From Bispira polyomma (lineage: Eukaryota), in the NCBI GenBank assembly GCA_965649765.1, contig OZ287756.1, positions 64,790,001 to 64,854,000 on the forward strand: 64,000 bases of DNA, given 5' to 3'. Of the stretch, positions 2,154 through 63,500 are shown in pieces; within the stretch, counting starts at the first letter, position 1; each line of letters begins with the position of its first letter. The translations under genes and the position numbers were made by a program. The notes under the pieces were generated by a model, which saw nothing but the letters and a program-made list of their open reading frames with translations, made no database searches and was not told the origin of the DNA.

Positions 2154-2370
2154 AAACAAGAGTTGTCTTTTAAAAACAGACATAGGCGCACAGTGTGAAA
2201 TACACAAACGTTGATATGGCCACTTTATACTCAGGCAAATCTGACACCCCCTCAATTAGGACAGGTGGATTGCTTTCAACCAATACATGAATGTCTTACA
2301 TCTTTTTTTTCTAATCAATGGTGGCACCTTTTTCAGAATATAAAACAACATCAGGCTGCGCTTGATAAAA
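2154..2370 (+). repeat. Dispersed repeat, second copy at about 11158..11420
   Basis: AAACAAGAG(T/A)TGTCTTTTAAAA...ACGTTGATATGG...GGTGGCACC(C)TTTT...CAGG.TG.GC.TGATAAAA shared by both copies; the 3' part recurs near 11920..11963. Confidence 0.65.
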
Positions 2371-4913: not shown

Positions 4914-5145
4914 AAGCATTGCGCTTCACAATCACTGGTCTCTCACCTCTGGGCGGCGTGAGTCAGAATCCCGTCGATGCCTTTGTGGGAAAGTTGGTAG
5001 TTCCTTACTGTGGGCCGCTGGTTTCAGTGCAGAACCTTGACCGACTGTATGCAGCGTTTCCTCCAGCGTTTTCAACTACCCATCCCAATATAACATACTA
5101 AAATGTACTAGAGTGAACGTTAAATATCCAAATTTAAATTCAAAT
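4914..5145 (+). mobile_element. tRNA-derived SINE (family A), 5'-truncated copy
   Basis: Matches the other copies but lacks the A box. 13-bp TSD TACAGTATATCTA at 4901..4913 and 5146..5158. Confidence 0.9.
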
Positions 5146-16751: not shown

Positions 16752-17936
16752 ATGTCAAGTTTCAAGGAGGCCCCTTACCAGGCAGCAGATATAGATGGAG
16801 GACTGAGTACAGGCTCACCCATTGCTGGCATCAATCTGAGCCACAATATGATATTCTCCAATGACACCACTACACCAGGAGATGAGCAAGAGGCCGCATG
16901 CGAGGGGAGCTTCTGCTTTGTAGTGCTGGGAATTATACAGCCAACTGTCTTTAGCCTCATCACACTTACTGGTATCTTAGGGAACAGCCTCGTGATCTAC
17001 GTCATCTTATCTAGGAAGAAGATGCGGACTGTCACCAACCTCCTCCTGCTTAACCTGGCCATCGCTGACCTGTCGTTTGTTATCATCTGTCCACCGTTCA
17101 CCGCCTACCAGTATGCCACCAACCACTGGCCTATACCTGGCATCTTTGGCTCGTTTGTGTGTAAGCTCATGCACTATTTGCTAAACGTCACCGTCTACGT
17201 CACCATCTACACCCTAGTATTAATCTCGGCCATTCGGTACATGACTATAGTCCACAATACCCAGACCATGAAGTACCGGACCCGTCGCAACATCATCCTT
17301 ACGATCGTTGGCATCTGGATTGTGGTGTCGGGCCTGAATGTGCCCATCATCATGACCCATGGCATCATCTACCAGTCCAGTACCCCTGTTTGTAATAACT
17401 ATGGCTTGGAGGTAGGCCGAGTGCTATACGTCATCTTCTTTGCATTCGCCTACGTTATCCCACTGACAGTGATAGCAGTGCTCAGCATTTGCATCTTACT
17501 GCACATCCAGACAAAGCGTCCAGTCATGATTGGCAAGCGCAAGTCCAGAAGCGCCAAGAAGAAGCGTCACGCTGCCCGTTTACTCATCCTGGTGGTCGTC
17601 ATTTTTGCGATCCTCTGGCTGCCCATCAATATTTTCCTGCTGGTTGCTTACTTCCATGGCGTCCCCGAAAACGCACCTATCATGGCAATCACCGTGGTAT
17701 GCTCCTGCCTGGCCTACTTCAACTCCTGTGTTAACCCCTTTATTTATAATTATGCTTCTAAAGACTTCCGCGAGAGTTTCAGGGAAGTGGCCTGCTGCGT
17801 AAGGGGCAGAAAATATGTGGACGGTGAGACTTCTTTTTACACTAAGGCCGCTGGTAATGACCTTTGCCATAATGGTCAAAACAAGACCACGATAACATGT
17901 GTCAAAGAGGACGTTTCTGATGCAGATGATGTGTGA
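16752..17936 (+). CDS. Rhodopsin-class neuropeptide GPCR, allatostatin-A/galanin/kisspeptin receptor-like (intronless CDS, 394 aa)
   Basis: Seven hydrophobic segments with TM1 GN, MRTVTNLLLLNLAIAD (TM2), PFTA..Y...WP, CKLMHY, YTLVLIS-AIRY (TM3), YVIP (TM5), LWLP (TM6), LAYFNSCVNPFIY (TM7), helix 8 FRESF and a CC palmitoylation pair. N-terminal N-glycosylation sequons NLS and NDT. Start context CAAAATG. Confidence 0.93.
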   Translation: MSSFKEAPYQAADIDGGLSTGSPIAGINLSHNMIFSNDTTTPGDEQEAACEGSFCFVVLGIIQPTVFSLITLTGILGNSLVIYVILSRKKMRTVTNLLLLNLAIADLSFVIICPPFTAYQYATNHWPIPGIFGSFVCKLMHYLLNVTVYVTIYTLVLISAIRYMTIVHNTQTMKYRTRRNIILTIVGIWIVVSGLNVPIIMTHGIIYQSSTPVCNNYGLEVGRVLYVIFFAFAYVIPLTVIAVLSICILLHIQTKRPVMIGKRKSRSAKKKRHAARLLILVVVIFAILWLPINIFLLVAYFHGVPENAPIMAITVVCSCLAYFNSCVNPFIYNYASKDFRESFREVACCVRGRKYVDGETSFYTKAAGNDLCHNGQNKTTITCVKEDVSDADDV

Positions 17937-31369: not shown

Positions 31370-34300
31370 CTGATTTAAAACAAATAACACGGAAACAGTT
31401 AGAAACTAAAAAGTCACTTAGTGGAGTGCACCCTTTCACCAAGGAAACAACCTGATAAAACTGCTAGAATAAGTTCACAGATAATTTGTTCTACTAATTT
31501 GATTCTTTCCTAATTCTTACACCATCCCTCAACCCAAATTCATGCCACTGGGTTCAGAATCTTTTGTTTGATTTTTGTGGCAAACGAACAAGGTACAGAG
31601 ATGAAAACATGATCTAGTTGACTAAAGTAATTATTAAAATACACGTAATTTTAACAGCAAGTTTAAACCACACACTACATACAATACACATATCTATAAA
31701 TTATATCAAGATATATAAAAAAAGTCTCTTTGTTAGCCATTATATGCACAGTATTCTCTACAAAAATAGTAAGCTGTCCAACAGCATATTGTAATGAAAA
31801 ATATAAACCATGTTTATGTAGCAGTAACTATAATTTCATTAACATTTTAATCCCTTTAAATTAAAATAGCATCATTCTTACCTTCACTTTTTCAGTCAGA
31901 CGATCATGAAACCACTTAATATTTTGGATCATCAGTAGGGCTGGAAACTTTTCCCTGAAATTCTCCATCGTGACTGCGGAGTTCTTGTTTTCATAGTTTG
32001 GCCACAGATCCTGGTGAAACAATATTCCTGCTATTGCTAAATCTGGTGATACAACAGTAGCCATTTCAGAACTAATATGCCTAACAATGAGTCTTCTGAC
32101 AGCTGACAGCAACATCAAATCATCTTTTACCTCTTTATCCAAATAATCTTCAGACATTTTGACAACATCCATACTTGGTTTTACAGCATAATTTTCATCT
32201 AGTGACTCCACAAAGACGGTTTTCGCTGCTTCCTCTTCTAGGAATTCATACAGGCTGCACACTTGACTAAGTTTCACATATTTCTGTATTTGTTCTCTTA
32301 AAGTCACTGCTTTGACGTTTTCATATTCAATACCCCACCTTTGTGCATATGTGCCCAGCATGTCTGTTTCTTGTATACCTGTTTTCTTCATAAATATCAT
32401 TACTGTCTCAAGAAAGGTAATGAACGGCCTCAGTGAAATCTGACCAAAATTTTCCCTCAACCCCTCATGCAGGGTAACTTTTATATTTTCTGTCAACTCT
32501 ACTTGCATGAATTTATTTCTAAGCACTGTCACTGAGTGTCCTCCCTGATGAAATACTTCATTCCTGTACATTGTAAATGGAAATTCTTCGCCAAGCATTA
32601 AGTAATTTTTCCCCAGCATTAAATCATCGGCCATATCTTTTTCTATCTGAGCAAGGTTGTAGTTTTCCCAAAATCCTTCACCGTATCTCAGGTTATTTTG
32701 GCAATAGTTTGTAACTCCTTCAGGTAGATCAAACCTAATGACATTTGAATCTTGAGCTGCTTGTAAGTGAATGGTGGGGACTTCTACAAATGGTCCTTTC
32801 TTGAGAAATGAAAGACCTTTACATCCTGCTAGTGTGGCTATTGCAGCTTTTTGTATGAATACATTTTGAATTGCACACAGTACAGACATCACGTGATACA
32901 TTGGGCTATTTTCATCCTTCACAATACAAGATGATACAGGAGATAAACGGGTTACTTCAGGGATAGAATCTGAATGACCAATTCTTGACTGTACTACTTT
33001 TGAACATCTCACAGCATTCCAGCTCTCCTTAAACTGGGTGAAGCATTTTTTTCTTCTATCTTTTTCACTAACATCCTGATAGATGAAGTCATCAATTTGC
33101 AGACTTTCAGCCTCTTTCTGGGACATCTTTACATTGATACACGGGTATAACATCAGGTGCCACATCACAATTGGAAGAAGATGGTTCAAAAGTAACAGTT
33201 CTTCTTTGTACATCAGCGCTATGTGTAAGAAAGGACACACTTCAAACCTACTAGAAGCAATCTGACAACACATCTTCTCAATTGTTGGCATAGTACGATG
33301 TCTGCATATTAGGGAGTAACCATTGCTATTATCATTGTCACATTCATTGAGAATAGCAAGTAGGTCAGTCTTTTTAACCATCCCCTTGGTAAATTCTGTC
33401 AACATACTCTGTCGCTCTTCAAGTATGGTGTTGCAACATTGAACAAATTTAGCAGGGTCAGTCGCATTTATCATTTCTGTATTTTTCAACAACATATGAA
33501 GAAAGAAAGTCATTTGTTTAGCTGAAACATTCATGGCTGCGACTAAACTGTTCCAGTGGCTCTTGAAATGATTAAAGGTTTCATCTAAAGCTTCGCTATC
33601 CATCTCAGGTTTACAGTTTGCTTCTACGAGCATACATCCATGAAATAGAATACCACCTATGTGAAAAGTAGGTGTTTGGCACTTATAAAGTTGGGTTGCT
33701 TTGTAGCTATGTTTTGTCACAATGTATTTTTCTTTACAAGTATCACAATTTGCTTCATGACTGGTACTGCAGAATATTACATGATTACACTTGCAAGAGA
33801 TCATCTGCATTTCTGTTTCTACACTTTTGACACACAGCCTTGCTACATCACACAAGAAGTTATTTTCTGATCCAGTATTTCTGAGAATTTCATGCAGTAG
33901 CTTGCCTGAATTACTGACAAATACAGTGAATGTATGTAGCAGGAAGCTTGCTTGCAAAAGTGATTCATAGGTTGACTCTTGTGTTATATTCAAAATCGAA
34001 TGTACAAACTCCTTTCTTCCAAGAACACATTCCAGCAGTTCTTTTGCATGATCATGAAAAGGTGCAAGTTCAATTTCCTTAATTGCTATTCTATGACTGT
34101 GTTCAAGAGGTTCAATATATCTGGGCCAGTAGAATCTTTCTGCTAAGACTGCCACAACACTTTCAATATTGCTATAATCCAAGGCTAGTCTGCCCAGCAC
34201 ATCAGCAGTACCATCTAACGCAGCCATCTCGTCTTCTGCACACATGCCTCTAAAACCAATTCCACTCTCTAATGTATTTGTTGGCCATGGAATGTCTGTC

Positions 34301-37300
34301 ATGTTTTGTCCAGCTGACGGAAACATTGCAACTCTCTCTTTCAAATCTTTCAGCGAACCCATATACAATTGTTTCAAAAAATAGACCTTTAATGGGTTCA
34401 AACTCTCTTTATCTTGTTCATTCCAGGTGAGAGAGGCATCAACTCTTTGAAGTGTTGCTCTTTCTGCATTCACAGAATTGGGGTCACCTAATATGAATTT
34501 GGCTACACTCTCAATAAAAAGCCTTGCATAGGAAACACAAACAATATACTTGACAGACCAAGTTTCTGATCTCTTTATAAAAGCAACAGCATGTTGAAAC
34601 CTCTGTATGGAACCTTCACTCAAGTCAAGACTTTCAAAAAGTTGGTCTGACATCATATTTTCCACCACATCATTGCAAAGACAAATGCAAACATGAAAGT
34701 CAGTGACAGGGATTGGCTCTAAAAACTTTTGCAGTTCATCAATATCAATGACAGCTTCATCTGTTTGTAGCACTTTCAATAACGTATCTTCTTTGGCTAA
34801 AGTGTACAACATCCTCTGAATGATAGGGCCAGCATACACCACCAGCAGATCTAGGTTCTTTTGTCTGGTAAGGTATGTTATTGCATCAATTCTCCTTGGA
34901 GTGTTAGGATTAGCATCTAAGCAACGTAAAAAGTACATCAAAAGAATCTTCTGAATACTTAGAGCACTTAGTCCATCTGTTTCTGTGGATGATTCAAAGT
35001 GCTGGTAGACACTGTCACAATCAAATATGCCTTGGTCTTCTGCTGTGGTGTCTTCTGATGTCAATACTTCCTGTGATATTTTGTCAAGAAATACCACACA
35101 GTGCTCCTCTGTCTCAAACACAGAAGCCATAAATATATCTCTACATAGCCTGAGAAAGTGAAGTAATTCAGAAAAAGGATTTACCTTTGATGCATATGCC
35201 AGCAATTGACTACACTTACAGTACCATTCATCAAAACAGGAAAACTTTTCTAGACATGTTCTCACTGGCATCAGACTTCTACAAAGACATGTGACTATGT
35301 GTTCATCGATATCAGTATCTTCTGCTTCCTCTTCACTTGCAGATTGTGTAATTCTGTAAGTTTTTAAAGCATTCATAACATCTTTTCTTATTGAACTTCC
35401 ACAACCAGCCAGTAGCTTTAACAGCTGTTTAACTTTCTGTTTCTGGAGGGCCCATGTCAAAATCATTATTATTATGTCATCTATCAATTGTTCTCCTGGT
35501 AATGATAAACAGTGTCCTTCAAGGAACAGCCTACAAATTACACTTGCACTTTCATCATAAAAATCATCTTCACTGTTACTGTTGATGGTGTGGGATACAC
35601 TTAAGTAAAAGTCATGTTTCAGTCTTTCAAAACTCTCTCTATCACATTCCTTTTGGCCCAAGTGATCCGAGATCCGTTGTTCAATAAGACCAATATACCT
35701 ACGTATTAAACTACCTCGATCTTCTGGTATAATATCTTCAAGTGAATCAATCCCACCGATGTTCTCTCTCATCAGAAACAATTGGACAACATCATCAATT
35801 TCCTCTAGCAGATCTCTACTGTAAGGTAAATTATAATTAACTGGAGAATGAGTAACCACAAATCTTTCTGTTTCTGATGATTTACTTTTGGCCGACTTGT
35901 AGTGAGAAAATTTTCTCTGAAACATTTCCTCCCATCTAAATTTCAACCAAGAAGTACCATGGCCGTCTATATCTGTGTAACTCCACCAAGATGCTGTGCT
36001 TTCCAAAAACCAGATTAACTCTACAAGGGCATTCTTAACTAAATCTTGCAGGTGAAAATTCAAAGCCCCATGTAATGAACCACCCTCGAGCATTTTCACT
36101 GGATTTTTTGCCACATCAATGTACCAGTTGTCAGTGTGATAAACATTGACTTGTGTTGTAACGGGTAACTGTTCTGCATACGTCATGATTTCTTCACAAA
36201 GAAAGTTCAATAAGCATTCACTCCTTTGCATAGTGTCACCCACTCTCCATAATCTTTTTGCAGATCCTCCTAAGCTTGAATACTCCAAACTTCCCAAAGC
36301 CCATACTAAATTATGGCTTATTACATCCCTTACTGGACAGAAGTCACTCTTCAGCAAATCGTGTGGTGAATTGCCTAATAGACCAGATCTAATAGGAAAC
36401 TTTGTCTTTTCAATCATGTCTAATGTAAATAGTTCCCAATCATTGGTATAGTCAAATTTCCATCCATGACACTTTTTGTCTTCTGATCTTGACAAATGTA
36501 TAAGAAAAGCCACATGTTTCACAAGCCCACCAGGCAAAACTGACTGAATGTAAATTTGTCGCTCATTTTCTATCAGCAATTTTGCAAGAAGCATATGCTC
36601 ACTGTCTAAAGATGGTTTACATTGAAGCACAAATAGAACCTTGTCTTCACTGAAAAATTTGGATATCTGATTTGATAACTGTTTCTCAGACTTGACTGCA
36701 CTAAGCTTTTCAACATGACATAGAATACCAGGGCAGAGTCCATGTACATCTGTATTTATGTCAGTGTTTGTCATGATAACATATTTCTTTGGCACTTCAC
36801 CACCAAGTCCTTCAGCATAAAAAAAATCCTGAATACCATCAGTGGTGTGGTAGTCAAAATAGGCTTCCTGCATTTCTTCAATATCTTCGATCCCTTTTTC
36901 TGCCCATCGTGACAATGACATCCTAAGTACTGCACTTGGAGGGCATGTATAGAGCAGCAGTTGTTTGCATCTCTCAATGACATCTTCCTCTCTATCTTTG
37001 GATTTCTGTACTCTGTGTATCAATGATGGAATACTGTCACTCTGAAAGCCAAAAAATGCATCACCTGTGGTAAATATTTTGCCCTCTATATGACTGACAT
37101 CTGCAACCCATTTCTCCAGTGTCTTCACAACTGTCCGTTGAGAAGAAGAGAGCACTTCCTCATATAGTAATATCTGCTTTTCAAAGCGATTTAAGAAAGG
37201 TGGATCTGAATAGTCAACCTTTGTCCTGTCTACAATGACAATGCACTTGAAATTATCATGTACCACACACATTGGATTGCTGTAGGCATCTAATGCAATT

Positions 37301-40300
37301 CTGCAGTTTTTCTTTCTGCCAACAATGGTATAGTTCTGATTCAGCATATCATACAAAGAACCATATACACTTTCAAGATCCTTCAAAATTAATACAACAC
37401 CTTGTTCCATGCACAGGATAATTTTACTGATTATCCGATAGTTGTATTCTTCGTTCATGTCTTCTTCGAATTTGCTGCCGTATATAATCTCACAATGTCT
37501 TCCACTTGACCTCAGGATTTCTGAAATTAAACCGAGTGAAGAGTCACCACTAGTGATGATCATTAAGTGGCGACTGCTACTGTCAGCCAGATTTTCTTCA
37601 ATGAGATTCTTTACAACTGCACCATGGAAATGTTTTATACCTGGTCTTTTAGAATTTCTTTCAAAAGACCTGGCAAATGCCCCAGTGTCATTGCACAAAC
37701 CTCCAAAATTTCGGCTGATTCCTGTCATAATTAAGGAGGAAATTTCCTTGTGGTGAGCAACTGTGCTTGTTGAATCATATCTTGGACATAAGAATTTAAC
37801 AAGAGAGTAAAAATCTCTCAAACCATGAAAGTTTTTCATTGGTTGTGTATCATGATAATGAAAATATGTCACTGCCAGCGTTTTGAGAACATCATTTGGT
37901 ACTCTGTTTTGAAAACCATCTCTTATGGCCATTCCTGTATCATAAAGCTCATCAGCTGTGAGATCTGGCCTTGACAAATGCACAGCCCGATTCATTTTGG
38001 CAGAATCTAAAGCCCAATTAGAAATACCCACAACTGCAACATCAGGGAAATCCCCTGCATCTGGTTCAAGCAAGGTATGGAGAACTTTAAGAGGATTGAA
38101 CTTGGAAATTTCAGCCAAGCCAACTTCATCAAGCAGAACCACTGGCAAAATGTTTTCAGTTCTCTTGTGCCTTTTGTAATTATTGGCTTTTTCAAACACT
38201 TTTTGGATGCCTTCTGAAGTAGATGATTCAGAGCCCTGGTATGATACTATGTATAATTCTGGTAAAGTCTGAAGAAATTTGTCAACAGAATCTGGTCCAC
38301 GGAGACTGCTTTTTAACACTTGTACTGACAATGATTTGCTACAACCAGGTTTCCCTACAAGGAAAATAGGAATCCTATTCAACATACATGTCAAAATCAC
38401 AAACACATTTTCTCTTAATGCAGTATTCTTTGCTGTTCCATGTGGTAGTATCATTCGATTTAGGATATTCATTTGTTCCCATCGGACAAATTCTGTAACT
38501 GTATCTACTGTTTCAGACATCTCTGCAGTAACAGTTTTCCAATAATCTTTCCTCATAGTAGTTTTAGGCATTCTTACCTCATATGATAGTGAAAGAGACA
38601 GTATCAAGGCACGTATATGGCAAGACATAGCTGTAAATTTGAAGGGCAAAGACTGGTTCTTATGCCTAAAGATGTGTTTATCTTTATTTGTTAAGAATTT
38701 CAGAAACCATTCTATCAGAGTTTTACATCTATAGACATCCCTTAGACTCACAGCTGACATACTTATCTCTGTTTTTCTAACAAACTTCTGTGAGGCCATG
38801 AGGATGTCGGCTATTTTAGGCAACTCTCCTTCCAAATCGCCAACCATTCTCTTTATATACATCAGTTCATCTGTCTCATGAAGTGTTCCATAATCCCATA
38901 CAAAGTCGATCATTGTTTCTGGCAGTGGATGCACCCTGTATACTAGCTGTGAAAACTCATCTGTTCTGGCTTTTTCAGTCAAACCACAGGATAGAATTTC
39001 ATGCTCTTCTCTTAGTCGGTAAGGATTACAAGCTGCTAATGTCACCAAGTTGGGGGACAATTTTTTGCCTCCACAAGAATGACTGGTAATGATTTCATTC
39101 AAGAGGCCAAGATGATTGCATGTATTTATTTCATCCAAAAACAACCAGTGCTGTTGGTCTAAGTTTTCCATTGCAATGGTATTACAGGTTACTACCTTTT
39201 CGAGTATCACATCTTCAGTAATCCCCGCATGAAACTGTAAGTCATAAAACTTAGCATCACATGTCTTTGCCAAGTATTTCACCAGTGTTGTTTTTCCACA
39301 ACCAGTCTCACCCATCAGCACAACAGGTACACCATTCTTAATTCTAAGAATAATCAGTACCATTTTTAATAAATTGTCTGGTGTCAATGCGTATGTGTCA
39401 CATAGATGTCCCAATCGTTTCTTGACATTTGAATCTTTTTTATCACAAACTAGTCTTTCAAGGCGATTTTTAAGGTCATCCTGGGGCAATGTTGTTAAGT
39501 CTGGTAGTGGCTTTTTCAACTGGTCTTGAAATAGTTGCCGAATATCTTCAGGGACATCAGATACATTTCTGTATAGAGCTGATACAGTGGCACTGTCTTG
39601 AAGGTGAAACAGCAACAATAAATGATTTGATGAATTCCATTGTATCATTCCCTTGACCCGGTTTACCATTTCATCAACTTCTGAGCTTTTTGTACCTCGA
39701 ACTGCAGATACACTTTGATGTTGTGATGATTTGCAAGCTGCAATTGATCTACATGAGAATTCCTTTGACATTGCAATCAGTTGTGTGACTATTAATTCTC
39801 TTACTGAATGTGCTTTTTTCTGGTCTCCAAGCATTAAGCAAAGACAATTTATTTTGAAATATTGGCTAACGGTGAGTTTTCTCAACTGATCTGCAAGAGC
39901 CTCCAAGAAAGTGTTTACAATGCTGAAAGACAAATCTGTGTCACCTTCAAATGTTTTCCTCAGTAACATTTGACATCTGTTTGATTCTATTGGTGCTGTA
40001 ATTTCAGATATGGAAACATCCTCCTTTCCAAAGCCATCTTCTTGTTTCAGTCTCAGATACTGGCAAACTACTTGGACTGCACTATATTGTTCCATACTAA
40101 CCACAAAATCGGTAAAGTTTGTCCATTTCAAGTGAATGGTTTGAAAGCATGATGCAATATACAAGGCATTCTGAAGGTAGTTATTCAGTGTGTTACAAAT
40201 TTCAATAGCTACATGGTCTGTCTTGAGTTCAAAGTAATGTGTTTCACACAGCGCAAATTTCATAACAAGTACTTCAAAAAGTAAATGGTCTAAAACTTGG

Positions 40301-43300
40301 CAATCATCAAGGTGTCCTATGTCTAAGTGTAAAACAACATCTTTGGAGACATCTGCCATCTGAAGTTGCTTCAACAAACTTTTCTTAGTTTGTAACCCAC
40401 TGACAGGAACAGTAACAATGCCTTTCTTTGCTTGTGCAGCAATGTCGTGTATCTTTTCTGTTTTGCCCAATCCAGGCAAATCTGATGTGACCATATATAC
40501 CAAAGGGCATGCCAACTGCAAGCATTCTTCAAGCTTCTGGGCTGATAGACCTGGAATTTTGTGAACCTTATCCCTAAATGAGTCTAAGAAAGGATGATGA
40601 ACATCTGACCTGCAGATAAAAGCTAACAAAAAATCTGTGGTACTAGTGCTTAACATTTTCATCTCTTTCATCAAAGAAAAAAGAACATCATATTCAAGCA
40701 TCTCAATTCCAATTATGCAATGTAGACTTCTGTCCCTGTGATATCCATAATGGGATCTGTTCAGCAGGATCATGCATTCCTCAAATGTTGTTTGCTCATT
40801 ACAAAACAGCAGATGAGCAGGCAAAGGAAACAAACCAGTGGTGTTTGCATACATTGATAATACTACTGGCATAACATGTGGATTTTTGGAATCAATGTGT
40901 GCAATAAACATATTTCCTACTTCTACTCTGGAATCTATGCTGTTGTCGCCTTTAAGAAAAACGTTCTGTTCATCTGCCAAACTTCCAACCATTACAGCTA
41001 ATTGTGTCCCTAAATAATGCAATTTCATATCCACACAGACATCACCATCATCTTTGAGTGGTTCAATTTCAGTGCAATTAATGTTTTTTGCACTAAGCCT
41101 CATATATCTCAGTATACCAAGAGCTTCTTTGTTAACACGACCTTGACTATTAAAATACTGGAAGACAATTGATAACTGTTTACCATGCAAAAAGTTCAGA
41201 TAATAGTGTTTTGATCGCTGATAAGCTAATGCCTGTTCCCATTCCTGAAGCTTGCCTTGCAATTTTTCTTTCCAGTTGGCTAAATGATCTATTTTCTCTG
41301 TGATAGTTGGTTTTGTAACCTCACAATCCAAAACATCAAAGTCAAAATGACCTGCTCTGCTAAGTTCCTGCAACACAAGATCAATTTCATTGACCAAATC
41401 AACAAATTCCACAAAATTTACAAGGTTTCCAGTTTTATTTTTTTCATCTGGTTTAACTTTTTCTGTATTGCTAATAAGCAAAGCACGACTTCTCAAGTCA
41501 GACATGTCAGACAACTGATAAACTTTTTCTTTGCCTTCCGAACATTTTACTGATGTTGTAACAGTATCATTATGCAAACTAAAAACTACAATTCCATCCT
41601 TCAATATACGTCCGACAGTATGCTTTGTTACTTCTCCCCTGTTTGCTACATTCATGTACAGAGCCTTTAAGCTGTTACAATTGTGTGCACAATTGTTAAT
41701 TCTCTGTGGAGCCTGTGTTTCTTTAGTGCTGAAACATTTGTTCAAGTGACGCATAAGCTCAGACAAACTTAGACTTTTATTCTTGGTACATTCTCTTAAA
41801 ACTGGATGAAGCATGTTCTTTAGTTGAATGAAATCTGATACAATACCTTCCTGCAACAGTTCATCAGAGTGTTCTTCTACTGCATCAATTAGATTGCGCA
41901 GATCTTCATCCTGAACACTAATGAGAAACTCTATCAAGCCTTGACTTGTGGACAATTCTGCAATTACCTCCCACTGATACTCTGTTTGTATCTGCTTTGT
42001 TTGCTCTAAAAATGATTTACTGTTCCTGTAAAGTGTTTCAGTTTGTAACAAATGTGTGTTCTGTTTCATTTCAAGCATGCTCTTTACAGCTTTTAGTACT
42101 GGTTTTGTGTCATCAGAATCTAACATAAACACAGTGGGCAGCTTTACTAAATATTCTGCTTTGTCTGTGTTATAATCAAAATCAGCAATATTCCCAAGCA
42201 CAACACTAAACATCTCTGGGATATTTTGATGGAGAACTCGCTCAACCTCTTTTACTTCTGCCATGATGTCACATTCTTTGAAGAAGTTTTCAAGATCAGC
42301 AACCAAAACAGATTCCTTCCGCATAAGCAGTGCCATTGCTTTCTCATGGTAGCTTGGAAGTAACTGTTTACTGACATAATCTACAACATCATTTGCATTT
42401 GCATATTCTGTTGAATCTATAACTTCAAAATGCACAACCAATGAATCATCAGAACCTTCATGTAATTCATGCCTGGCTTCTGATGCTCTTTTATCTTCCT
42501 TTGGAGCTGAATAATCTGTTGTATCCTTATCTTTAGAACGTTCACTCATTGAATCACGAGAATGTTCTGGTGACATTTTGTCATCTTTGATATCTGTTTC
42601 TTCAATAGCTAAATCTGCAAATTCTGTCGATCCAAAACTATCAGATTCATCTGTTCCAAGTTCAGACCTAGCACTGTGAACGGCGACCACAAAGGGATCA
42701 AAAGTGTCAAGAATATGATTTTTAAAAGACTGCATAGATGATACTACATGCAGCTCTAAACAAGAAGATAGATGCCACACCTCTTCCCAATCTTGATGCT
42801 CAAGAACATCAATTATGGTGATTTTGCTATTGGAAACATCACAGATAAACTCTTCCAACTGACATTCTCTAGCAGACAAATTCACTATTCTACATTTATT
42901 TTGGGAAATGAATTGAAGCATCTTGTTGGCTTTTTGTAAGGACTCTAAACAACTATCTAATTCACCAAGTGATTGCTCCAATCTCTTCACCAAATGTGGA
43001 TAATCATGTTCAATAGAATTTTCAAGGACAACATTCAGAAATGACACACAGTTCTTTTCACCTGTTGTTTTTAGGAGGTCAAACAGCCATTTAGCATACA
43101 TTGGGCACATATGTTGATTCTCCAAAACCTTATACAAATTTGTCAAAAGAGTTCTCAGATGTTTACTTGTACGATGAGATGTTACCTTTCCAGCTTCAGG
43201 CCCTTTACATGTCATTATTCTAAACCAAAACTTCCAGTTTTGAAAAATAGCACTGATTCCTTTCATATCGTCATCACCTACTCCAAATGCTGGGTGTTTT

Positions 43301-46300
43301 GATAACAATTCATCCATGAACATATCATATGTAGCCCTAAAAGAACAACATAGTTACACATTAACGAATTACTCCTTATAAAGAACACAATATTCTAACT
43401 AGAGTACTGCTTTGCAAATGAAAAGAAATTGTTTTTGCACAGCAAAAACAAAGCGTCTCAATAAGACATTGAGCAATTTTCTGCATATACCCTTCGAGCC
43501 CTTTAAATTTTGGGTAAGTTGCTGAGTATACTGAGTATACCCTCCGAGCCCAAAAAATTTTAATTTTCTAATTTTTTAAAAATTTAAAATTTTTGAAAAA
43601 TGTTTAAATTTTGAAAAATGTTAAATTTTTGGGCAAGTTGCTAAGTATACTGAATACACCCTTTGGGCCAAAAATTCAGCCAAAATCGCTCTATTTCGCA
43701 CCGTTTCAGAGTTATTAAGAATTTTTATATATTTTGTTGAGATATTAAGGATTTTTGCAAAATTTTGACTTTTTTAAAAAAATTTAAATTTTTTTAACAA
43801 TTTTGAAAATTTTGACTTTTTCACTTTTTAAAAATTTTTTAAAAGTTTTGCATTTTAAAAAAAATTTAAATTTTTGAAAAAAATTTAAATTTTTGGGCAA
43901 GTTGCTGAGTACTGAGTATACTGAGTATGCGCTCTGGGCCCAAAATTCAGCCGAAATTGCTCGCACTGTTTCCGAGATATTAATAATTTTTCATTTTCTT
44001 CGTTTTGAAAAATTCTAACGTTTAATTAATCGTTAATAAGTCGGCTATTTTGTATCTGATCGCTTCCCAAAGTTATCTACTGCCGGACATCTATATAAGA
44101 AACCTACTTGCCAAATTTCATGAGAATAGGTAAAGCGCTTTTTAAGTTATCATCCGGACAAGCACACCCCTTTAAAAAACGTGTTTTTGGTCATGTGACT
44201 TGATAGGTCGAAATGTGATGGCACTATATTGAAATTTTTTTACCAGGGCTACTGCATACATGTACAAAATTTGAAGAAGATCCAACCAGTGGTTGCTGAA
44301 CTATAGCAATTAGAAAATACGGGAGCCGGCAGAGCAGGCAGAGCCGGCGGCCCTTTCCGCGTGAATCTTCAGCTGTATACAATAAAAGGGAAATTTTTTG
44401 TCACGCCTTATCAATTGGCTATAACTCAGCAACCACTGGGTGGATTCTCTTCAAATTTGGCATATGTATGCAGTAGCTCTTGGGCAAATTTTCAAAATAG
44501 TGTCATCACATTTCGACCAATCAGAGAAGTCGCATGACCAAGAACGCGTAAATTTTACTCCTATATACAAACAAGCGCCCTTACGGGACGCTTAATAAAG
44601 AACCAAAGTAAGACACAAACAGTACAAACATAAGCACATATATCATGAGTTTTCTAACACTTTCGCTTTAACTGCTATCATATCGTTTTGCACAGAGACC
44701 TAAGTCAACATATTTCTTTCAAATTATATTTCACTAAAACTGAGTACAAAATGTTGTACTGACAATAAAAACTTATTATGTTTTTACCAATTGAGAATTT
44801 AAATACATGTAGTTAAAACATGTTTCACGATCTCATTTTAAAGTAATTGATTTTATTTAAGGAGTTTTTATTAAATGTGGCATGTCCATATAAAATTAAT
44901 GAATTCACCCAAAAAATAAATCAACTATGCATCGACAATCCATTCTTCATTAAGAGCATTTTAAAAACTATATATGCTAATAATCAATGATGCATCTATT
45001 TTACATAGAGTATACAGCATACCCAAATTTCATGCAGGCAGACTCACAAGAAAGGTGTATAAAAATGGGGGGATAAAAAAAGTGCTATGCACATTGGATT
45101 GTAGCTATTGAAGGCACTACATTATAAGTGTAGTAATATATTAAAATATCAGGTAGTTTCATAATAATTATGTTGGATTGGCTTAATGAAAAGTTATCTT
45201 CAAATAAAAGTACAGAAGTACCAAAGACCAAGTAGGAGATGTGTTGCTGATACATATCATTTAAATTTTTCAAATAGAAGGGCACAAATACATATTGAGA
45301 GGAATGTCCAAATTCAGAACATTCAGAGATATTTTGAAGACAACATATTGCCCAAATATGGTGTGTTGGGTACTACTACTGATTTGCCCTCAACTTTCCC
45401 TGTTCTCTAACACTCACAAAATGATGATTTTGCATGTACCTAAAATCAACATATTGAAAAATGTAAAGTCACTAGGAAAAGGTTTTTTGGCCCGATTGAT
45501 CTGTAAATCTACTGACGTCTGGATATTATCATACATAAGGTCCATACTAAATCTTATTGAGGTAAGAAGAATACTATCACAAAAAAGTTAGTAACAAGCA
45601 GGTGTAACATAAAAAATTGTTTTTGATACAATGGTGAAAAGTAAAAAAGTTACAAGTCAAACATTCCCGCGTCTATAGAAGAGACCTGCAAAAAATCTTA
45701 ATGATAGCAATTATAACAAGACCTAGCGCAACCGATGGATATTTGTATCCACTGGGAACATAAAGCACCCTAGGTAGGAAGCACTATAGCTAGCACCCAA
45801 GTTAGCAGCCTATTATATGCTGCAGGGCATTTTTTTACAGAAGTGTTAGGGCCAAAATGGCACAAGTGGCTTTGACATTGCAAACTTGTGGGAGCAGTAA
45901 TAAGTGTGAGATAGGTGCTTTTAAGTTCAGCCATCCCTGTTTGACCTTAAAGGAGAGGCCAAAGGCCAAATTTGAACACAGCAAAAGATTCCCACCCCAT
46001 GATTTCCTATAGCCTTCTTTTACACCCTAAACCTGTTTGACCAAAAATAAGCACGATATAGGCACTTTTAAGTTTGGCCATCCGTGTTTGATCTTGAAGG
46101 AGAGGGCCAAGGTCAAATGTGAGCACATCAAAAGATTCCCTACTCATGATTTCCTATAGGTTGGTTCCAGATCCCAAACTTCTGGGACCAATAATAAGCG
46201 AGATATAGGCACTTTTAAATTTGGCCAAAATCAGTCACTTAGTGTACTTTGGCACTTTGTCGATGACCTTGAATGAAGTGATTCAAGGTTAAATGTCTGC

Positions 46301-49300
46301 ATGCTTAAACAGGACATATATATGCGTTAAACATATCACCCATAAAGAGATTCAACCTTCTTCAGCAGAGAAACAGACAAAGTTGGTCAATACAAAAAGC
46401 ATGATTATTTTTAAAGAAACGCCTGTGGCGGCCATCTTTATTTTCAAAATGAGGCCAAAATTACTCACAGGCAAGCTTTTCTAAAAAAAAGCATTTCCTG
46501 TAAATTTGGGGAGCCTTGTAAAAGTTTTCTCATGACAGTGGTAATGGCAAAATCCAAAATCCAATGTATCCAGCGGAGTTTTCCGGTGGATACAATAAGG
46601 GAGATTTTTAAAGGAGACCATAATGCGGCGGCGGCAGCAACAAAACCATGGGTGAATCCTAAAAAGTGCCATTTTCAAGGGATGCTTAATTATGAACCTA
46701 CATTTTGTCCAGGTGGATAGGCCCTGGTCCAAAAACCTCCTCTAAAATCTTTTCATTATCCCTTTCCCAATCAAAGTTTTGTCGGTGAAGCAACAGTCTA
46801 GCCTTGCACTGTCTTTCAAAGACATCTCTTGACGTTTTACTGAGACCCATTGCATTTTCCCATGCCTCCATAAGAACTTCTACTTTTATTTTGCAAACAT
46901 CAGAGTACACAGAGTCTTCTAAAATTTTAATTAGTGCAGCATCTTTGGCCACACATTCCAGTTCTAAGATATATCCAAGAGCTACATAGAGATCCAACAC
47001 TTGCTCAAACGCTTTGCTTCTATGTTGCTTTAAAAATGATTTCCCCTGATTCAGCCAATGCAAACATATGTGGTGGTCCTCGGCTTCCAGTGAAGTGTAT
47101 GCCTTTTGTACATACACTACAAACAGTGAGTGTAGCTGTGGACACTTTGATTCTGCTAAAATTTTCATCAACTCTCTGGAGTTGTTTTTGCTAAATGTAA
47201 GATCAGATAAAATGTTCTGAGAAAGCATGTTTACTTCGTCTTCACTCCAGTACCTTGAACTAAATTTTACAATCTCAATTATTTTATCTTCGATAGGAAT
47301 CTGCACTTTGAGTAACAGATCCTTCCCAGCATGTGTAGTTAATTTCTGAACAATCTCTGCAATCATCCTCAGAGATTGCCTCTGATAGGAAGCAGCATCA
47401 ACTATTTCTTTTGTTACTTTAGCAATAACTTCCTTCTTTACACAATCTTGAATTTCTTGACATAATTCCTTCTGAATCATCTTTGACTTGGCTATTGTTT
47501 TTACTGTTTCTAATATTTTTTCAAAACTTGAGGCTTTCCTGACTACTAACAAGAATGGCTGAATCGCTTCTCTGCCATATTGCTCGACACAACTCGCTAC
47601 TTTTGCAAGACACTGGTCCAACCCAGTTTCTTCTTTGCCCCTTTCATATTTAACCATTTCAACCACACATTCACTCGTTAGGAATGGAAAACAAAAATAA
47701 ACCACCTCAAAGGTCGTCATGTGCTTTTGAAAGGCCCTGTCAAACAAGTGTCTACATAGACTACCAAGTAACATAAAATCTGTTTTGCTGGGAAAAATGT
47801 CAAAGCATGACTTGTATACCACATCTAAGCACCTTTTAGCAACAGCTTTAGAGATATCCAATGTGATACTACTCTTTTTGAAACAAGAAGAAAGTGTATG
47901 CAGCAAGCACAATAATTGAGCATCATGACTTTCATGTAATAGATCCAGTAACTTTCGGAGAACTCTAAACTTCTTTTCTCTGTTAAGACTGTGAGACTCA
48001 ATCAGGCATGCAACAACATGTTGATCTTGCAAAATCATTATATTATCTTTCAGATTTTCATTTGAAGTCATTTTGCTGACTATTTCAACAATAATTCCAC
48101 AGCCGTCATAAGTGTCGTCTTGTATATCTTTATGAGCTGTCACTGAAGGGTCAGTAAATATATGATAAAAGTTATTCATAAGAGGCAAAGGTTTGTACCA
48201 TTTTTCTTCGACATCTTTCGAACCACGTATTGAACTAAACAATTGGTATTTGGTGATACCAAAACGACACCTATAATTGGCACAATCTGACACCAAAACA
48301 GGTAGATTTGTTTTCCACACACATTCATGGATATCTGATCTCTTGAGATTACATGACTGTTCTTCAGTGTTGTCCTCATTAACTGTTACCCATGCCTCAG
48401 TTGCGTTTACATGATGAGGAATGACTAAATGTATAGTCATGCTTATTTTCTAGAAATAAAAATACATATCTCAATGTTTATTAAATTAAAACATTTCATA
48501 ACATATGTCATGATAAATATGATACAGTATAATGATGCTTTGATCAAACAGCAAAATGATTATAGAACTAGAAATATGTATCACAAACAGAAATGCCCCT
48601 GGCATCACTGCTAAGCATATGTGATTAACATCGCAGTCATTTACTGTTATGCTATTTGTAAAAGGTAATACATGAAAATAATACAGGAAGATATTGTACA
48701 ACATAATATATTATTACTTATACCATGGATCTGATACTAGTTAATTCTATTAACCCATTAATTAATACAATATTCTTTGTATATAAATATTGATGAGTGA
48801 ATCTCACATTCCTCCATCCTGGAGTTCAAGATGGTTGCCAAAATCATAAAATTTGTGAAAAGTTACAATCACTCTATCACGCACCGTTTACGAAATAGCT
48901 GGTCAAATAAGGTCAAATCGCTCTATCTTGCATCGAATGGCTCTATCTTGCACCGTTATGAGATAGTGGACATTTCCAGAAAATAAGCAAAAATTCAAGA
49001 TGGCCATCATTGTCGTAAAATTTGTGAAAAATTGTCATAGACCCTGAACAAGATACCCTGTTGACCAAGAATGAAGTCAAAATCACTCTGCATTTATGAG
49101 ATTGCTGACATTTCCGAAAAAGACAGAAATTCAAGCTGGCTGTCAAAATAGTAACACTTGTAAAAAGTTGTCAGATCCAAACAAGAGGAGAATGGACTGG
49201 CGGCCATATCATGACAATGCCACTACAAAGCAAGTTACTGACGAGTCTGGAAATAGTGAACCAGTCATTACTCAGCGATCGAAATGGATTTGAGAACCAT

Positions 49301-60281: not shown

Positions 60282-60504
60282 TGTTGAGTACGGCGTACGA
60301 TAACCTCACCATCGTATTTGAGTTTTAGTATGAACCGGAAGTTGCCGACCGCATGTCGCAGAAAGCTAGCGTGGACTTATGTTACAGTATATATATTGTT
60401 TGTGTATCAGCGGTTTATCACATCATGAATATGAAATAAAGATAATAAACTAGTATTAATATTGTGTCTATCTTCCTACAATGGCAGCCTCCAACATTCC
60501 AACA
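60282..60504 (+). repeat. 5' LTR of the copia element (223 bp)
   Basis: TG...CA ends with a 5-bp inverted repeat, internal TATATATA and AATAAA motifs, PBS directly after. The left edge cannot be confirmed without the 3' LTR. Confidence 0.7.
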
Positions 60505-63500
60505 GGTTATGGGCCCAGAATGTACTTTAATGGAGATGAGAGTAAATATGAGCTGTGGGAAATGAAATTTTTAGGACACATGAGGATAGTAAAATTGTAT
60601 GGTGTTTTTGGTGGTCCCGATGAACCAACACTGGCAAACAATGCATTAGGGTTTGCACAACTTATACAGTACCTCGATGACAGAAGTCTTAACCTGATCA
60701 TGCGAGATGCGAAAGATGACGGAAGGAAGGCATTGAAAATTCTCAGAGAGCATTACCTAGGAAAGGGAAAACCCCGTATTATATATCTCTACACACAGCT
60801 AACATCATTACAGATGCAAGAAGGTGAACCCATTACAGACTATTTAATAAGAGCTGAAACAATATCGACTGCATTAAAAACTGCTGGTGAAAGTATAAGT
60901 GACAGTTTGTTAATGGCCATGATTATGAAAGGACTACCAGACAAATACAACACGTTTTGTGCAGTGATGAGCCAGAAGGATGGTGAAAGTACATTCCTTG
61001 AGTTCAAAATTTCTCTCAAGTCGTTTGATGAAAATGATCGATATCGGCATACTTCAGAAAGCAAAGAAAGTGACAGAGTAATGAAGACACGTCCATTCAA
61101 CAAACCCTCTTCTAAAATCATGTGTTATACTTGTGGTCAGCCAAACCACAAATCTTACCAGTGTTCATCAAATGAGAAGTCAAGCAACCGTGGTGATACT
61201 TATGGCTACCGTGGTAACGGTCACCGACAAATCAACAATCGTACCAAGTGGTGCAGCAGGTGCAAGAGTTCATTACATACTGATCGAGAATGCAGAAAAC
61301 CAGGGAAAGACTCCGCGAAAACTGTATCTGGCGCTGGTGTGAATGAAAAAGAACAAGGGACTGTGGATGATCATAGTTTTGCCTTTAAGGTTGATTATGT
61401 TAAGTATAATGATGAAATAACTGTTGCATGTAATTCCGTCTTAGTTGATTGTGGGGCAACAGCCCATATTGTTACAAAAAGAGAGAATTTTATTTTATTC
61501 GATGATTCAGATACTAAGGCCCACTTTATTGAACTAGCAGATGGTAGTAGGTCAAACAATGTTGTGGTAGCGAAAGGAAATGCTTCTACTTCTGTTCATG
61601 ATAGTGACGGTGTAAAACATAAGGTACTGCTTGAAAATGCATTGTACATACCATCTTACAAACAAGATTTTTTTCTGTACAAGCAGCAGCAAGCAAAGGT
61701 GCCAACATAAATTTTGGTCCAAATAAAGCAGAAATCATAGCTCCAGATGGCACTGTATCCAATGTTAAAAAATCTGGTCGTTTGTACTATCTAAATTCTT
61801 TGATGAGCTCTGAAACTGCCCCTCGTACCAGTGAAGAATGGCACAAAACTATGGGTCACTGTAATACTCAAGATGTGTTGAAATTAGAAAGTGTCGTAGA
61901 TGGTATGAAAATTTCCGACAAATCCGATTTTGATTGTAATGTGTGTGTGATGGGCAAAATGCCCCAGTTCACAAATCGTAGTCAAGACAAAAAGGCCCAA
62001 ACTTTGTTTGAATTAGTGCATTATGACCTTGCAGGTCCAATCACCCCAGTAGCAAGAGAAGGTTACAAGTATTGTTCAATGTTTGTAGATGATTATTCTG
62101 GAATATCAATGGTATATTTCTTGAAAAATAAACTGACAACACTGAAGCTCTAAAAAGGTTTCTCGCCGATGTAGAACCTTTCGGCAAAGTAAAAACGGTG
62201 AGATCGGACAACGGGACTGAACTAACTTGTCATACTTTTGAATCTGTGTTAGTCGAAAACAAGATCAAGCACGAGTTTAGTGCACCTTATTCTCCGCACA
62301 AAAATGGTACCGTAGAACGTGGGTGGAGAATGATATTCGATATGGCTAGATGCCTTATAATAGAAGCGAAATTACCGAAATATCTATGGGCATATGCTGT
62401 ATATGCTTCTGTTTACATAAGAAATCGCTGCTACAATCACAGATTAAAGAAAACTCCTCATGAAGTACTTACAGGCAGAAAACCAAACCTAGGCAAAATG
62501 CACATTTTTGGAACAGACTGTTTTGCTTATGTACAAAACAAAACTCGATCCCCGCAGTCAGAGAGGAATATTTCTGGGCTATAATAAAAATAGCCCAGCA
62601 TACATTGTGTACTTTCCGGAACAAAACACAATAAAACGAGTTTGATGTGTAAAGTTCACCGACAAATTTAATGTAGGTCCGAAAAATGAGCAGTGTGACA
62701 GTAACATACCTATTGTAGGTGAAATGAGTGAACTCAGTTGTTGTACTGAAGAAACTGTTATCTCAAATGATAATGTACCTGAGAATACCGATAGAAGATA
62801 TCCAACTAGAAGTCGTGCTGAACCTGAATATTTGAAAGACTATGTAACTGTGGTAGAAGCATGCAATAACAATCCGAGTATAGATTATTTGTATGAATTA
62901 CATAATTTTGAAGCCCCCAAAACATATGGAGAGGCAATTGCTAGTGACAAATCAAAAGAGTGGCTGAATGCCATGAAAGAGGAAATGTGTGCCCTTGATG
63001 AAAATGAAACATTTGACTATACAGTATTACCACCAGGTGCAAATTTGATAGGTGGAAAATGGGTTTTTGCTATTAAACAAGATTCTAAGGGTAAGAGAAA
63101 ATACAAAGCCAGATATGTAGCAAAAGGGTATTCCCAAATTCCAAACATAGAACACACAGACACATTTTCACCAACGGCACGTATCACATCTGTTTGTATG
63201 CTAATGCAAATAGCCATGCAACAAAATATGACAGTACATCAGATGGATGTAAAAACAGCCTTCTTAAATGGGCAAATTGATTGTGAAATTTTTGTAGAAC
63301 AGCCAAACGGTTTTGAAAAATCTGAAAATAATGGTAAACAATTGGTTTGCAAACTTAGAAAATCATTGTATGGGCTAAAGCAAAGTGGACGTATTTGGAA
63401 TCAGTTGTTGCATGACTATCTTGTTGAAAATGGCTTTCAACAATTGTTGTCAGATTCATGTGTATATGTACAAGATAGTAAAAGATCTAAGGTTATTCTT

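What the first reader, a model, noticed from the sequence alone, without database searches (positions are those of the whole stretch)
33709..33795. RING-less RNF213-like protein with a compact RZ finger
Seen: I find no C3HC4 RING anywhere in the 3.8k-aa exon, but the E3 module contains CKCNHVIFCSTSHEANCDTCKEKYIVTKH, i.e. C-x3-H-x3-C-x7-C-x2-C-x8-H. Known (recalled from the literature): mammalian RNF213 ubiquitylates bacterial LPS without its RING, using the RZ finger (about C-x3-H-x6-C-x8-C-x2-C-x8-H) with four Zn ligands, an active-site Cys and a downstream His. Inference: all six positions appear to be kept here, but the loop around the putative catalytic Cys is 4 aa shorter and the usual GECG and IGG glycines are missing. 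This may be an invertebrate RZ-only transthiolating immune E3 with altered E2 or substrate preference.
Basis: partly seen in the sequence, partly recalled or inferred. Interest (0 to 1): 0.8.

Follow-up and report, generated by a model that had tools for sequence, protein, structure and literature searches.

The report
RNF213-like protein with reduced RZ finger
A giant RNF213-type ATPase gene of an invertebrate lacks the RING and keeps only the four zinc-binding residues of the RZ finger, as does a whole uncharacterised animal subfamily, so the proposed catalytic Cys/His pair is probably a private coincidence of this one gene.

Summary
The sequence observation holds. The motif is at window 33709-33795 (-), residues 3177-3205 of an intact 3820-aa ORF. 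That ORF is a true RNF213 relative (AAA core E 7e-126; E3 module fold Foldseek E 1e-17, VIA Z 16.8). The ORF holds a single CxxC, and no frame of the window holds a RING signature. Three alignments and a fold match place the finger where the RZ finger sits.

The catalytic reading is not supported. Pfam's RZ model does not detect the finger. Among 52 relatives with the same short finger, only four positions are conserved: C3177 (49/52), C3179 (45/52), C3193 (52/52) and C3196 (51/52). Its "active-site" Cys3185 is Cys in 4 of 61 aligned relatives. Two of 48 fingers have His at +9 (one is this gene). The nearest relative (56% identical) has Arg and Gly there. Cys3185 also sits three residues before the canonical nucleophile column.

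The short finger marks an old, unnamed RING-less subfamily found in bivalves, a gastropod, a nemertean and sea stars. The same genome also has a classical RING+RZ paralogue. The finger is most likely a structural zinc knuckle left from an RZ finger. This is a new variant of a known kind, of moderate interest.

The parts
31861..43323 (-). Single 11.46-kb open reading frame of 3820 aa (Q): the AAA core, E3 module and C-terminal domain of an RNF213-like protein. The stop codon is included.
   Evidence: ORF list and translation. phmmer against PDB: RNF213 E 7e-126, Q1133-2171 against human about 2212-3303.
39289..39312 (-). Walker A (GETGCGKT, Q1338-1345) of the first active AAA module. The matching Walker B (LFLDE) is at Q1394-1398.
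   Evidence: Pfam AAA/AAA_5 hit at Q1334-1402. Motif scan. Aligned to the RNF213 Walker A.
38332..38355 (-). Walker A (GKPGCSKS, Q1657-1664) of the second active AAA module. The matching Walker B (VVLLDE) is at Q1728-1733.
   Evidence: Motif scan. Aligned to the RNF213 GKPGSSKS.
31864..34773 (-). Q2851-3820: E3-shell C-lobe, finger and C-terminal domain, with an RNF213 E3-module fold.
   Evidence: AF2 model with pLDDT 83.5. The Foldseek top 9 are all RNF213, E 1e-17 to 5e-11. VIA-align against 9jwg_A: Z 16.8, model 6-736 against human 4146-4979.
33709..33795 (-).
33793..33795 (-). Cys3177, metal ligand 1 (Cys in 49/52 short fingers; invariant in the 41-row MAFFT alignment).
33787..33789 (-). 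Cys3179, the likely metal ligand 2 (Cys in 45/52; Cys in 8/8 canonical RZ rows).
33781..33783 (-). It is kept in Q, P0001 and P0002 but in only 14/52 of the subfamily. It is an alternative second ligand, as in vertebrate C-x3-H.
33769..33771 (-). It is Arg in P0001 and Cys in 4 of 61 aligned relatives. It aligns with an Ile/Val strand position of canonical RZ fingers, three residues before their catalytic Cys.
33736..33747 (-). Cys3193-x2-Cys3196, metal ligands 3 and 4 (52/52 and 51/52). The subfamily consensus is C-P-x-C.
33709..33711 (-). His3205. It is in the same column as the canonical RZ general-base His (IGGxxH), but 2 of 48 short fingers have a His at +9, one of them this gene. It is Gly in P0001.
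46698..48440 (-). 580-aa ORF 3.4 kb upstream on the same strand, probably an upstream (N-arm) exon of the same gene. It has no CxxC and no Pfam family.
   Evidence: It is 43% identical over 583 aa to the ORF that lies 2.2 kb upstream of P0001 in another assembly. It has weak hits to N-terminal parts of P0044 and P0067. It was not joined to the main exon.

Best explanation
The motif is the remnant of an RZ finger in a genuine but RING-less member of the RNF213 (mysterin) family. The gene belongs to an old, unnamed subfamily. Named members come from bivalves, a gastropod, a nemertean and sea stars, and many more come from metagenomic contigs. In this subfamily the finger has shrunk to a four-ligand zinc knuckle, C-x-C-x(13-20)-C-P-x-C. 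The hairpin tip that carries the nucleophile (GxCG) and the IGGxxH segment that carries the general base have been lost. Shown here: homology of the protein, absence of a RING, positional homology of the finger with RZ, conservation of only the four ligands, and lack of conservation of Cys3185 and His3205. Inferred: the finger binds one zinc ion and acts as a structural or docking element of the E3 module, not as a transthiolation site. With both Walker A/B pairs intact, the protein most likely works as an ATP-driven AAA+ machine, perhaps in immunity as reported for bivalve genes annotated RNF213. Its ligase chemistry, if any, does not rest on a family-conserved RZ Cys/His dyad.
For: RNF213 homology: E 7e-126; Foldseek E 1e-17, top 9 all RNF213; Z 16.8, 617 residues aligned. 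No RING: with a positive control. RZ position: the Pfam RZ of P0024 at 3664-3713 falls in the same columns; hhalign 93%, E 2.6e-7; Q3105-3287 against human 4427-4654. Conservation: one search gives C3177 49/52, C3179 45/52, H3181 14/52, C3193 52/52 and C3196 51/52. One search gives Cys in 4 of 61 at the C3185 column and His in 6 of 61 at the H3205 column. Of those six His, four are among the 52 short-finger rows. One search gives His at +9 in 2/48. P0001 (56% identical over the C-terminal 970 aa) has Arg and Gly, and P0002 has neither residue. Reading the alignment by eye, Q and P0001 share about 40% of the 40 finger residues, below their 56% average. Pfam PF20173 finds 14 RZ fingers in this genome but not this one, and nothing at E<=10 on sub-fragments. 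Tree with the finger columns removed: canonical-RZ rows lie on one side of a branch (SH-aLRT 99) and 33 short-finger rows on the other; Q+P0001+P0002 form a supported group among the short-finger rows. Taxa. Walker motifs.
Against: In this one gene a Cys does lie in the loop, and a His lies exactly in the canonical general-base column. From background frequencies I estimate the joint chance at roughly 1% per sequence, so a lineage-specific regain or retention is not excluded. I had no model coordinates, so I could not measure the Cys3185-His3205 distance. The tail holding His3205 is modelled at low confidence (pLDDT about 55). No zinc-binding, expression or activity data exist for any member. 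The trees are unrooted and lack vertebrate RNF213, so 'loss' of the dyad rests on parsimony: the dyad is shared with canonical RNF213 and ZNFX1. Only one close relative (P0001) is available to test conservation.
Confidence: 0.72

Rival explanations
1. In this species the short finger is an active, minimal RZ finger. Cys3185 accepts ubiquitin from an E2 by transthiolation and His3205 acts as general base, so the protein is an RZ-only immune E3 with altered E2 or substrate preference.
For: All six residue types are present. His3205 falls in the canonical His column in hhalign and MAFFT. The finger is at the RZ position in an RNF213-type E3 module. Mammalian RNF213 works without its RING (PMC11549300, PMC12075652). 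RING-less relatives with a full RZ exist in fungi.
Against: Cys3185 and His3205 are missing in P0001 and P0002 and in about 95% of the subfamily. Cys3185 is out of register by three residues and sits on a predicted beta strand rather than a hairpin tip. The GxCG and IGG motifs are absent. Pfam RZ gives no hit. The loop and tail evolve faster than the rest of the protein.
Confidence: 0.12
2. The subfamily is still a cysteine-dependent ligase but has moved the nucleophile elsewhere in the E3 module or C-terminal domain. One candidate is the subfamily-specific Cys3466.
For: Cys3466 is Cys in 36/50 (hmmalign) and 25/33 (MAFFT) short-finger rows, but Gly/Ala in 7/8 canonical-RZ rows. The E3-shell and C-terminal domain folds are retained at high model confidence, which suggests the module still does something.
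Against: The support is purely correlative. 72-76% conservation is low for an active site. No partner His was identified. Nothing known in RNF213 points to this site.
Confidence: 0.08
3. The motif is a chance cluster of Cys/His residues with no metal binding and no relation to RZ.
For: Pfam PF20173 gives no hit. The small AF2 model had no significant Foldseek match.
Against: Four Cys columns are invariant or nearly so across 41-62 diverse homologues, including canonical RZ fingers. hhalign gives E 2.6e-7. This is the only CxxC in 3820 residues, yet it is conserved in 51-52 of 52 relatives.
Confidence: 0.03

Closest known systems
Mammalian RNF213 / mysterin (PDB 6TAX, 7OIK, 8S24, 9JWG)
   Same: Giant protein with a dynein-like AAA core and two Walker A/B-competent modules. 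The E3-shell and C-terminal domain fold is the same, with a zinc finger inserted at the same place in the E3 module.
   Different: No RING. The finger is four residues shorter between ligands 2 and 3. The GxCG nucleophile tip and IGGxxH are not conserved. The single 3820-aa exon starts at about human residue 1080, so the N-arm lies in other exons if it is present at all. Sequence identity in the E3 module is only 13-14%.
RZ-type zinc finger (Pfam PF20173; RNF213 and ZNFX1)
   Same: Same position and same four-ligand zinc site. The profile-profile match has 93% probability. The C-x-C form of the first ligand pair is shared with canonical RZ fingers of fungal and metagenomic RNF213-like proteins.
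   Different: Below detection by the Pfam model. The Cys/His catalytic dyad that defines RZ activity (PMC12075652, PMC11549300) is not a conserved feature of the short finger.
RING-less RNF213-like proteins of Glomeromycota fungi (e.g. CAG8454752.1 of Acaulospora morrowiae, CAG8457357.1 of Racocetra persica)
   Same: Same overall architecture and no RING by pattern search. They are homologous over the whole C-terminal 970 aa.
   Different: They keep the full canonical RZ (CxCG[FY]xYxIGxCG...CPxC...IGGxxH) and fall on the other side of the tree split.
Classical RNF213 paralogue in the same genome (G000 C1, about 106.51-106.56 Mb, minus strand)
   Same: Homologous AAA segment and E3-module exon.
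   Different: It is multi-exon. It carries a true C3HC4 RING (L026) and a Pfam-positive RZ of 70 bits with GECG and IGGxxH.

Membership tests
RNF213 / mysterin family | Dynein-like AAA core homologous to RNF213, with two Walker A/B-competent modules | tested here: met
   phmmer against PDB RNF213 gives E 7e-126 over Q1133-2171. Walker A is at Q1338 and Q1657, and Walker B at Q1394-1398 and Q1728-1733.
RNF213 / mysterin family | E3 module (E3 shell) plus C-terminal domain fold | tested here: met
   AF2 model with pLDDT 83.5. Foldseek E 1e-17, top 9 all RNF213. VIA Z 16.8 with 617 residues aligned to human 4146-4979.
RNF213 / mysterin family | C3HC4 RING inside the E3 module | tested here: not met
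   One CxxC in 3820 aa. No Pfam RING. No RING or half-RING pattern in any frame of the window. The pattern was validated on a paralogue.
RZ-type zinc finger (PF20173) | Match to the curated family profile | tested here: not met
   No hit at E<=10 on three sub-fragments. It is not among the 14 hits of a six-frame scan of the whole genome. The profile does recognise the relative P0024 in the same alignment columns.
RZ-type zinc finger (PF20173) | Four metal ligands, located between the E3 shell and the C-terminal domain | tested here: met
   C3177, C3179 (or H3181), C3193 and C3196 are conserved. Position. Metal binding itself was not tested.
RZ-type zinc finger (PF20173) | Nucleophilic Cys on the first hairpin tip (GxCG; human C4516, mouse C4462) | tested here: not met
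   The GxCG tip is deleted. Cys3185 lies three residues upstream of the canonical column. That column is Cys in 4 of 61 relatives and Arg in the nearest one.
RZ-type zinc finger (PF20173) | General-base His nine residues after the last ligand (IGGxxH; human H4537, mouse H4483) | tested here: inconclusive
   His3205 is in the right column. But IGG is absent, His at +9 occurs in 2/48 short fingers, and P0001 has Gly there.
RZ-type zinc finger (PF20173) | E2~Ub transthiolation activity | not testable with these tools
   This needs a biochemical assay.

The most novel reading that the evidence does not exclude
A large, ancient branch of RNF213-like giants in animals (molluscs, nemerteans, echinoderms) has lost both known ligase elements, the RING and the RZ Cys/His dyad, while keeping the AAA motor and the E3-shell scaffold. 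On this reading its members are either ATP-driven 'pseudo-ligases' (sensors or coat formers) or ligases with a new active site: a relocated cysteine such as Cys3466, or, in this gene alone, a re-created minimal dyad Cys3185/His3205.
Probability: 0.2. Interest if true: 0.7.

Novelty: new variant of a known kind. Interest (0 to 1): 0.4.

Why it matters
RNF213 is the only known enzyme that ubiquitylates bacterial lipopolysaccharide, and its chemistry rests on the RZ Cys/His dyad. Genes annotated RNF213 are expanded and PAMP-responsive in bivalves (PMC9993606, PMC7430831), and they are often assumed to act like the mammalian enzyme. This analysis shows that at least one large invertebrate subfamily keeps the motor and scaffold but not the RING or the conserved dyad. 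Function cannot therefore be transferred by name. The subfamily gives a natural test of what the RNF213 scaffold does without its known active sites. RING-less fungal relatives with a full RZ suggest that the RING may not be an original feature of the family.

Tried and rejected
Pfam on the whole ORF and on three sub-fragments at E<=10 found no RZ, no RING and nothing else in the C-terminal 1400 aa.

The word-index protein search on Q2950-3450 gave only two relatives, so I used the exhaustive profile search.

A search of the own genome with the 400 aa around the finger found only the gene itself, so there is no close paralogue of the short-finger type in this genome.

The 191-aa AF2 model had no significant Foldseek match (best RNF213 row E 0.63). 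VIA-align on the same model ranked human RNF213 first, but at a middling Z of 7.4.

Model coordinates are not exposed, so I could not measure the Cys3185-His3205 distance or superpose the finger on the human RZ.

Otten et al. 2021 (PMC7610904) is not held. I took the RZ definitions from PMC11549300 and PMC12075652 instead.

A RING pattern search of the second canonical paralogue (C1 93.35-93.39 Mb) found nothing. This may mean the motif is split by an intron or that the RING is absent, and I did not resolve it.

All searches used single exons by reference.

Literature searches found no description of this subfamily. The library is incomplete, so prior description elsewhere cannot be excluded.

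Full report
**Observation**

These are residues 3177-3205 of an uninterrupted 3820-aa ORF at 31861-43323 (-). The mouse dyad C4462/H4483 is given in PMC12075652.

**What the protein is**

- phmmer against solved structures matches human and mouse RNF213 at E 7e-126 over Q1133-2171.
- Both Walker A/B pairs of the two active AAA modules are present.
- An AF2 model of Q2851-3820, built on 41 homologues, has pLDDT 83.5.
- Foldseek returns RNF213 structures as all nine significant hits, at E 1e-17 to 5e-11.
- VIA-align gives Z 16.8 against the human E3 module, mapping model 6-736 onto human 4146-4979.

The ORF is therefore a genuine RNF213-family member covering the AAA core, E3 shell and C-terminal domain. 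A 580-aa ORF 3.4 kb upstream on the same strand is 43% identical to an ORF in the same position upstream of the nearest relative. It is probably an upstream exon.

**RING**

- The ORF contains a single CxxC.
- Pfam finds only AAA families.
- A C3HC4/half-RING pattern finds nothing in any frame of the 64-kb window.
- The same pattern finds a textbook RING in a paralogue on contig C1 at about 106.514 Mb, between its AAA and RZ exons.

The gene is therefore RING-less, while the genome also holds a classical RING+RZ RNF213. None of 67 homologues spanning the finger has a RING by this pattern. Pfam confirms this for two of them. RING-less RNF213-like proteins are thus common, not a peculiarity of this gene.

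**Is the finger at the RZ position?**

Yes. An exhaustive profile search found 324 relatives.

- In an hmmalign of 67 that span the finger, and in independent MAFFT alignments, about ten relatives carry a full canonical RZ (CxCG[FY]xYxIGxCG...CPxC...IGGxxH). Their four ligands fall in the same columns as C3177, C3179, C3193 and C3196.
- One of these, P0024, is recognised by Pfam PF20173 at exactly those residues, at E 2e-16.
- hhalign of a 38-row short-finger profile against a 12-row canonical profile, which includes two RZ exons of this same genome, gives 93.4% probability and E 2.6e-7.
- VIA-align of a 191-aa model ranks human RNF213 first (Z 7.4, a middling value). It maps Q3105-3287 onto human 4427-4654, which brackets the RZ.

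**Is it an active RZ?**

The evidence is against this.

- Pfam PF20173 does not detect the finger, either on fragments at E<=10 or in a six-frame scan of the genome that found 14 other RZ fingers.
- Conservation among 52 short-finger relatives is as follows:

| Residue in Q | Same residue kept |
|---|---|
| C3177 | 49/52 |
| C3179 | 45/52 |
| C3193 | 52/52 |
| C3196 | 51/52 |
| H3181 | 14/52 |

- The C3185 column is Cys in 4 of 61 aligned relatives, and the H3205 column is His in 6 of 61. Of those six His, four are among the 52 short-finger rows.
- Counted without alignment, 2 of 48 short fingers have His at +9, one of them this gene. 17 of 48 have some Cys in the loop, several of which are shifted ligands of C-x2-C type.
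- The nearest relative P0001 is 56% identical over 970 aa, is also a single exon and shares the upstream ORF. It has Arg and Gly at the two positions. P0002 has neither residue.
- In both hhalign and MAFFT, Cys3185 aligns with the Ile/Val strand residue three positions before the canonical nucleophile. His3205 does fall in the canonical His column.
- The loop and tail are less conserved between Q and P0001 (about 40%, counted by eye) than the protein average.

The family signature is therefore a Cys4 knuckle, C-x-C-x(13-20)-C-P-x-C. The apparent dyad in this gene is best explained as coincidence. From background Cys and His frequencies I estimate roughly 1% per sequence, so such a case is expected somewhere in a family of hundreds.

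**Distribution and history**

- Named short-finger members come from Sinanodonta, Mercenaria, Haliotis, Lineus and Asterias. All are annotated 'uncharacterized' or 'hypothetical'.
- Canonical-RZ, RING-less members among the hits come from Glomeromycota fungi.
- In a tree built without the finger columns, canonical rows lie on one side of a branch (SH-aLRT 99) and all 33 short-finger rows on the other. Q+P0001 (100) plus P0002 (99) form a group among the short-finger rows.
- Adding the two canonical RZ exons of this genome puts them with the canonical group (support 87). The finger columns were not removed in that run.
- The trees are unrooted. Because the dyad is shared with vertebrate RNF213 and ZNFX1, its loss in the short-finger branch is the parsimonious reading.

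**Mechanism proposed**

Shown: homology, absence of a RING, the finger's position, and the conservation pattern.

Inferred: the finger binds one zinc ion through C3177, C3179 (or H3181), C3193 and C3196, and serves as a structural or docking element. The protein acts through its intact AAA motor and E3-shell scaffold. It may have an immune role, since bivalve genes annotated RNF213 are expanded and PAMP-responsive (PMC9993606, PMC7430831). It does not use a family-conserved RZ dyad.

Rivals: a private, active mini-RZ in this gene (about 0.12), a relocated nucleophile such as the subfamily-specific Cys3466 (about 0.08), and a chance motif (about 0.03).

**Limits**

I had no model coordinates. 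Only one close relative is available. The literature library is incomplete.

**Verdict**

This is a new variant of a known kind, of moderate interest.

Noticed in passing
G000 C1:106507758-106555397 (loci L003, L026, L017): The same genome has a classical multi-exon RNF213 paralogue. It has an AAA match, a true C3HC4 RING (about C1:106514143) and a Pfam-positive RZ (70 bits, with GECG and IGGxxH).
   Followed up: partly
G000 C1:93316666-93390012 (loci L019, L002): There is a second canonical paralogue whose RZ (72 bits) has Tyr instead of the general-base His (IGGQNY). No RING pattern was found in the 40 kb upstream of the RZ exon.
   Followed up: partly
G000 C6:40.14-40.21 Mb, C11:30.62-30.64 Mb, C9:21.32-21.37 Mb, C3:53.91-53.93 Mb, C12:44.57 Mb (loci L004-L015): Several near-identical partial RZ-finger matches (51-59 bits, and a second series at 26-28 bits) recur on five contigs. 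Some have an in-frame stop. They look like a dispersed duplicated gene or element that carries RZ fingers, possibly ZNFX1-like.
   Followed up: no
window 33076-33078 (-), residue Cys3466: This Cys is conserved in 72-76% of short-finger relatives but is Gly/Ala in 7 of 8 canonical-RZ relatives. It is a subfamily-specific conserved cysteine in the C-terminal part of the E3 module.
   Followed up: partly
proteins P0077, P0096, P0104, P0068, P0060 (Glomeromycota): Arbuscular-mycorrhizal fungi encode RNF213-like giants of 3400-4670 aa with a full canonical RZ finger and no RING by pattern search.
   Followed up: partly
window 46698-48440 (-): This 580-aa ORF has no Pfam family. It is 43% identical to the ORF upstream of P0001 and is probably an N-arm exon of the same gene.
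   Followed up: partly
window 16752-17936 (+): Intact 394-aa single-exon rhodopsin-family GPCR (7tm_1, E 3e-54).
   Followed up: no
window 60481-61710 (+): A 409-aa ORF with copia-type gag, a zinc knuckle and the Pol beta-barrel domain. It is a fragment of an LTR retrotransposon.
   Followed up: no
loci L020 and L021 (ENA ERZ22147071): The two closest relatives, P0001 and P0002, come from one assembly. Each is a single exon of about 3830 aa, so the giant single-exon structure and the duplication into two paralogues are shared with at least one other species. The window's own genome showed no P0002-like copy in the search I made.
   Followed up: partly
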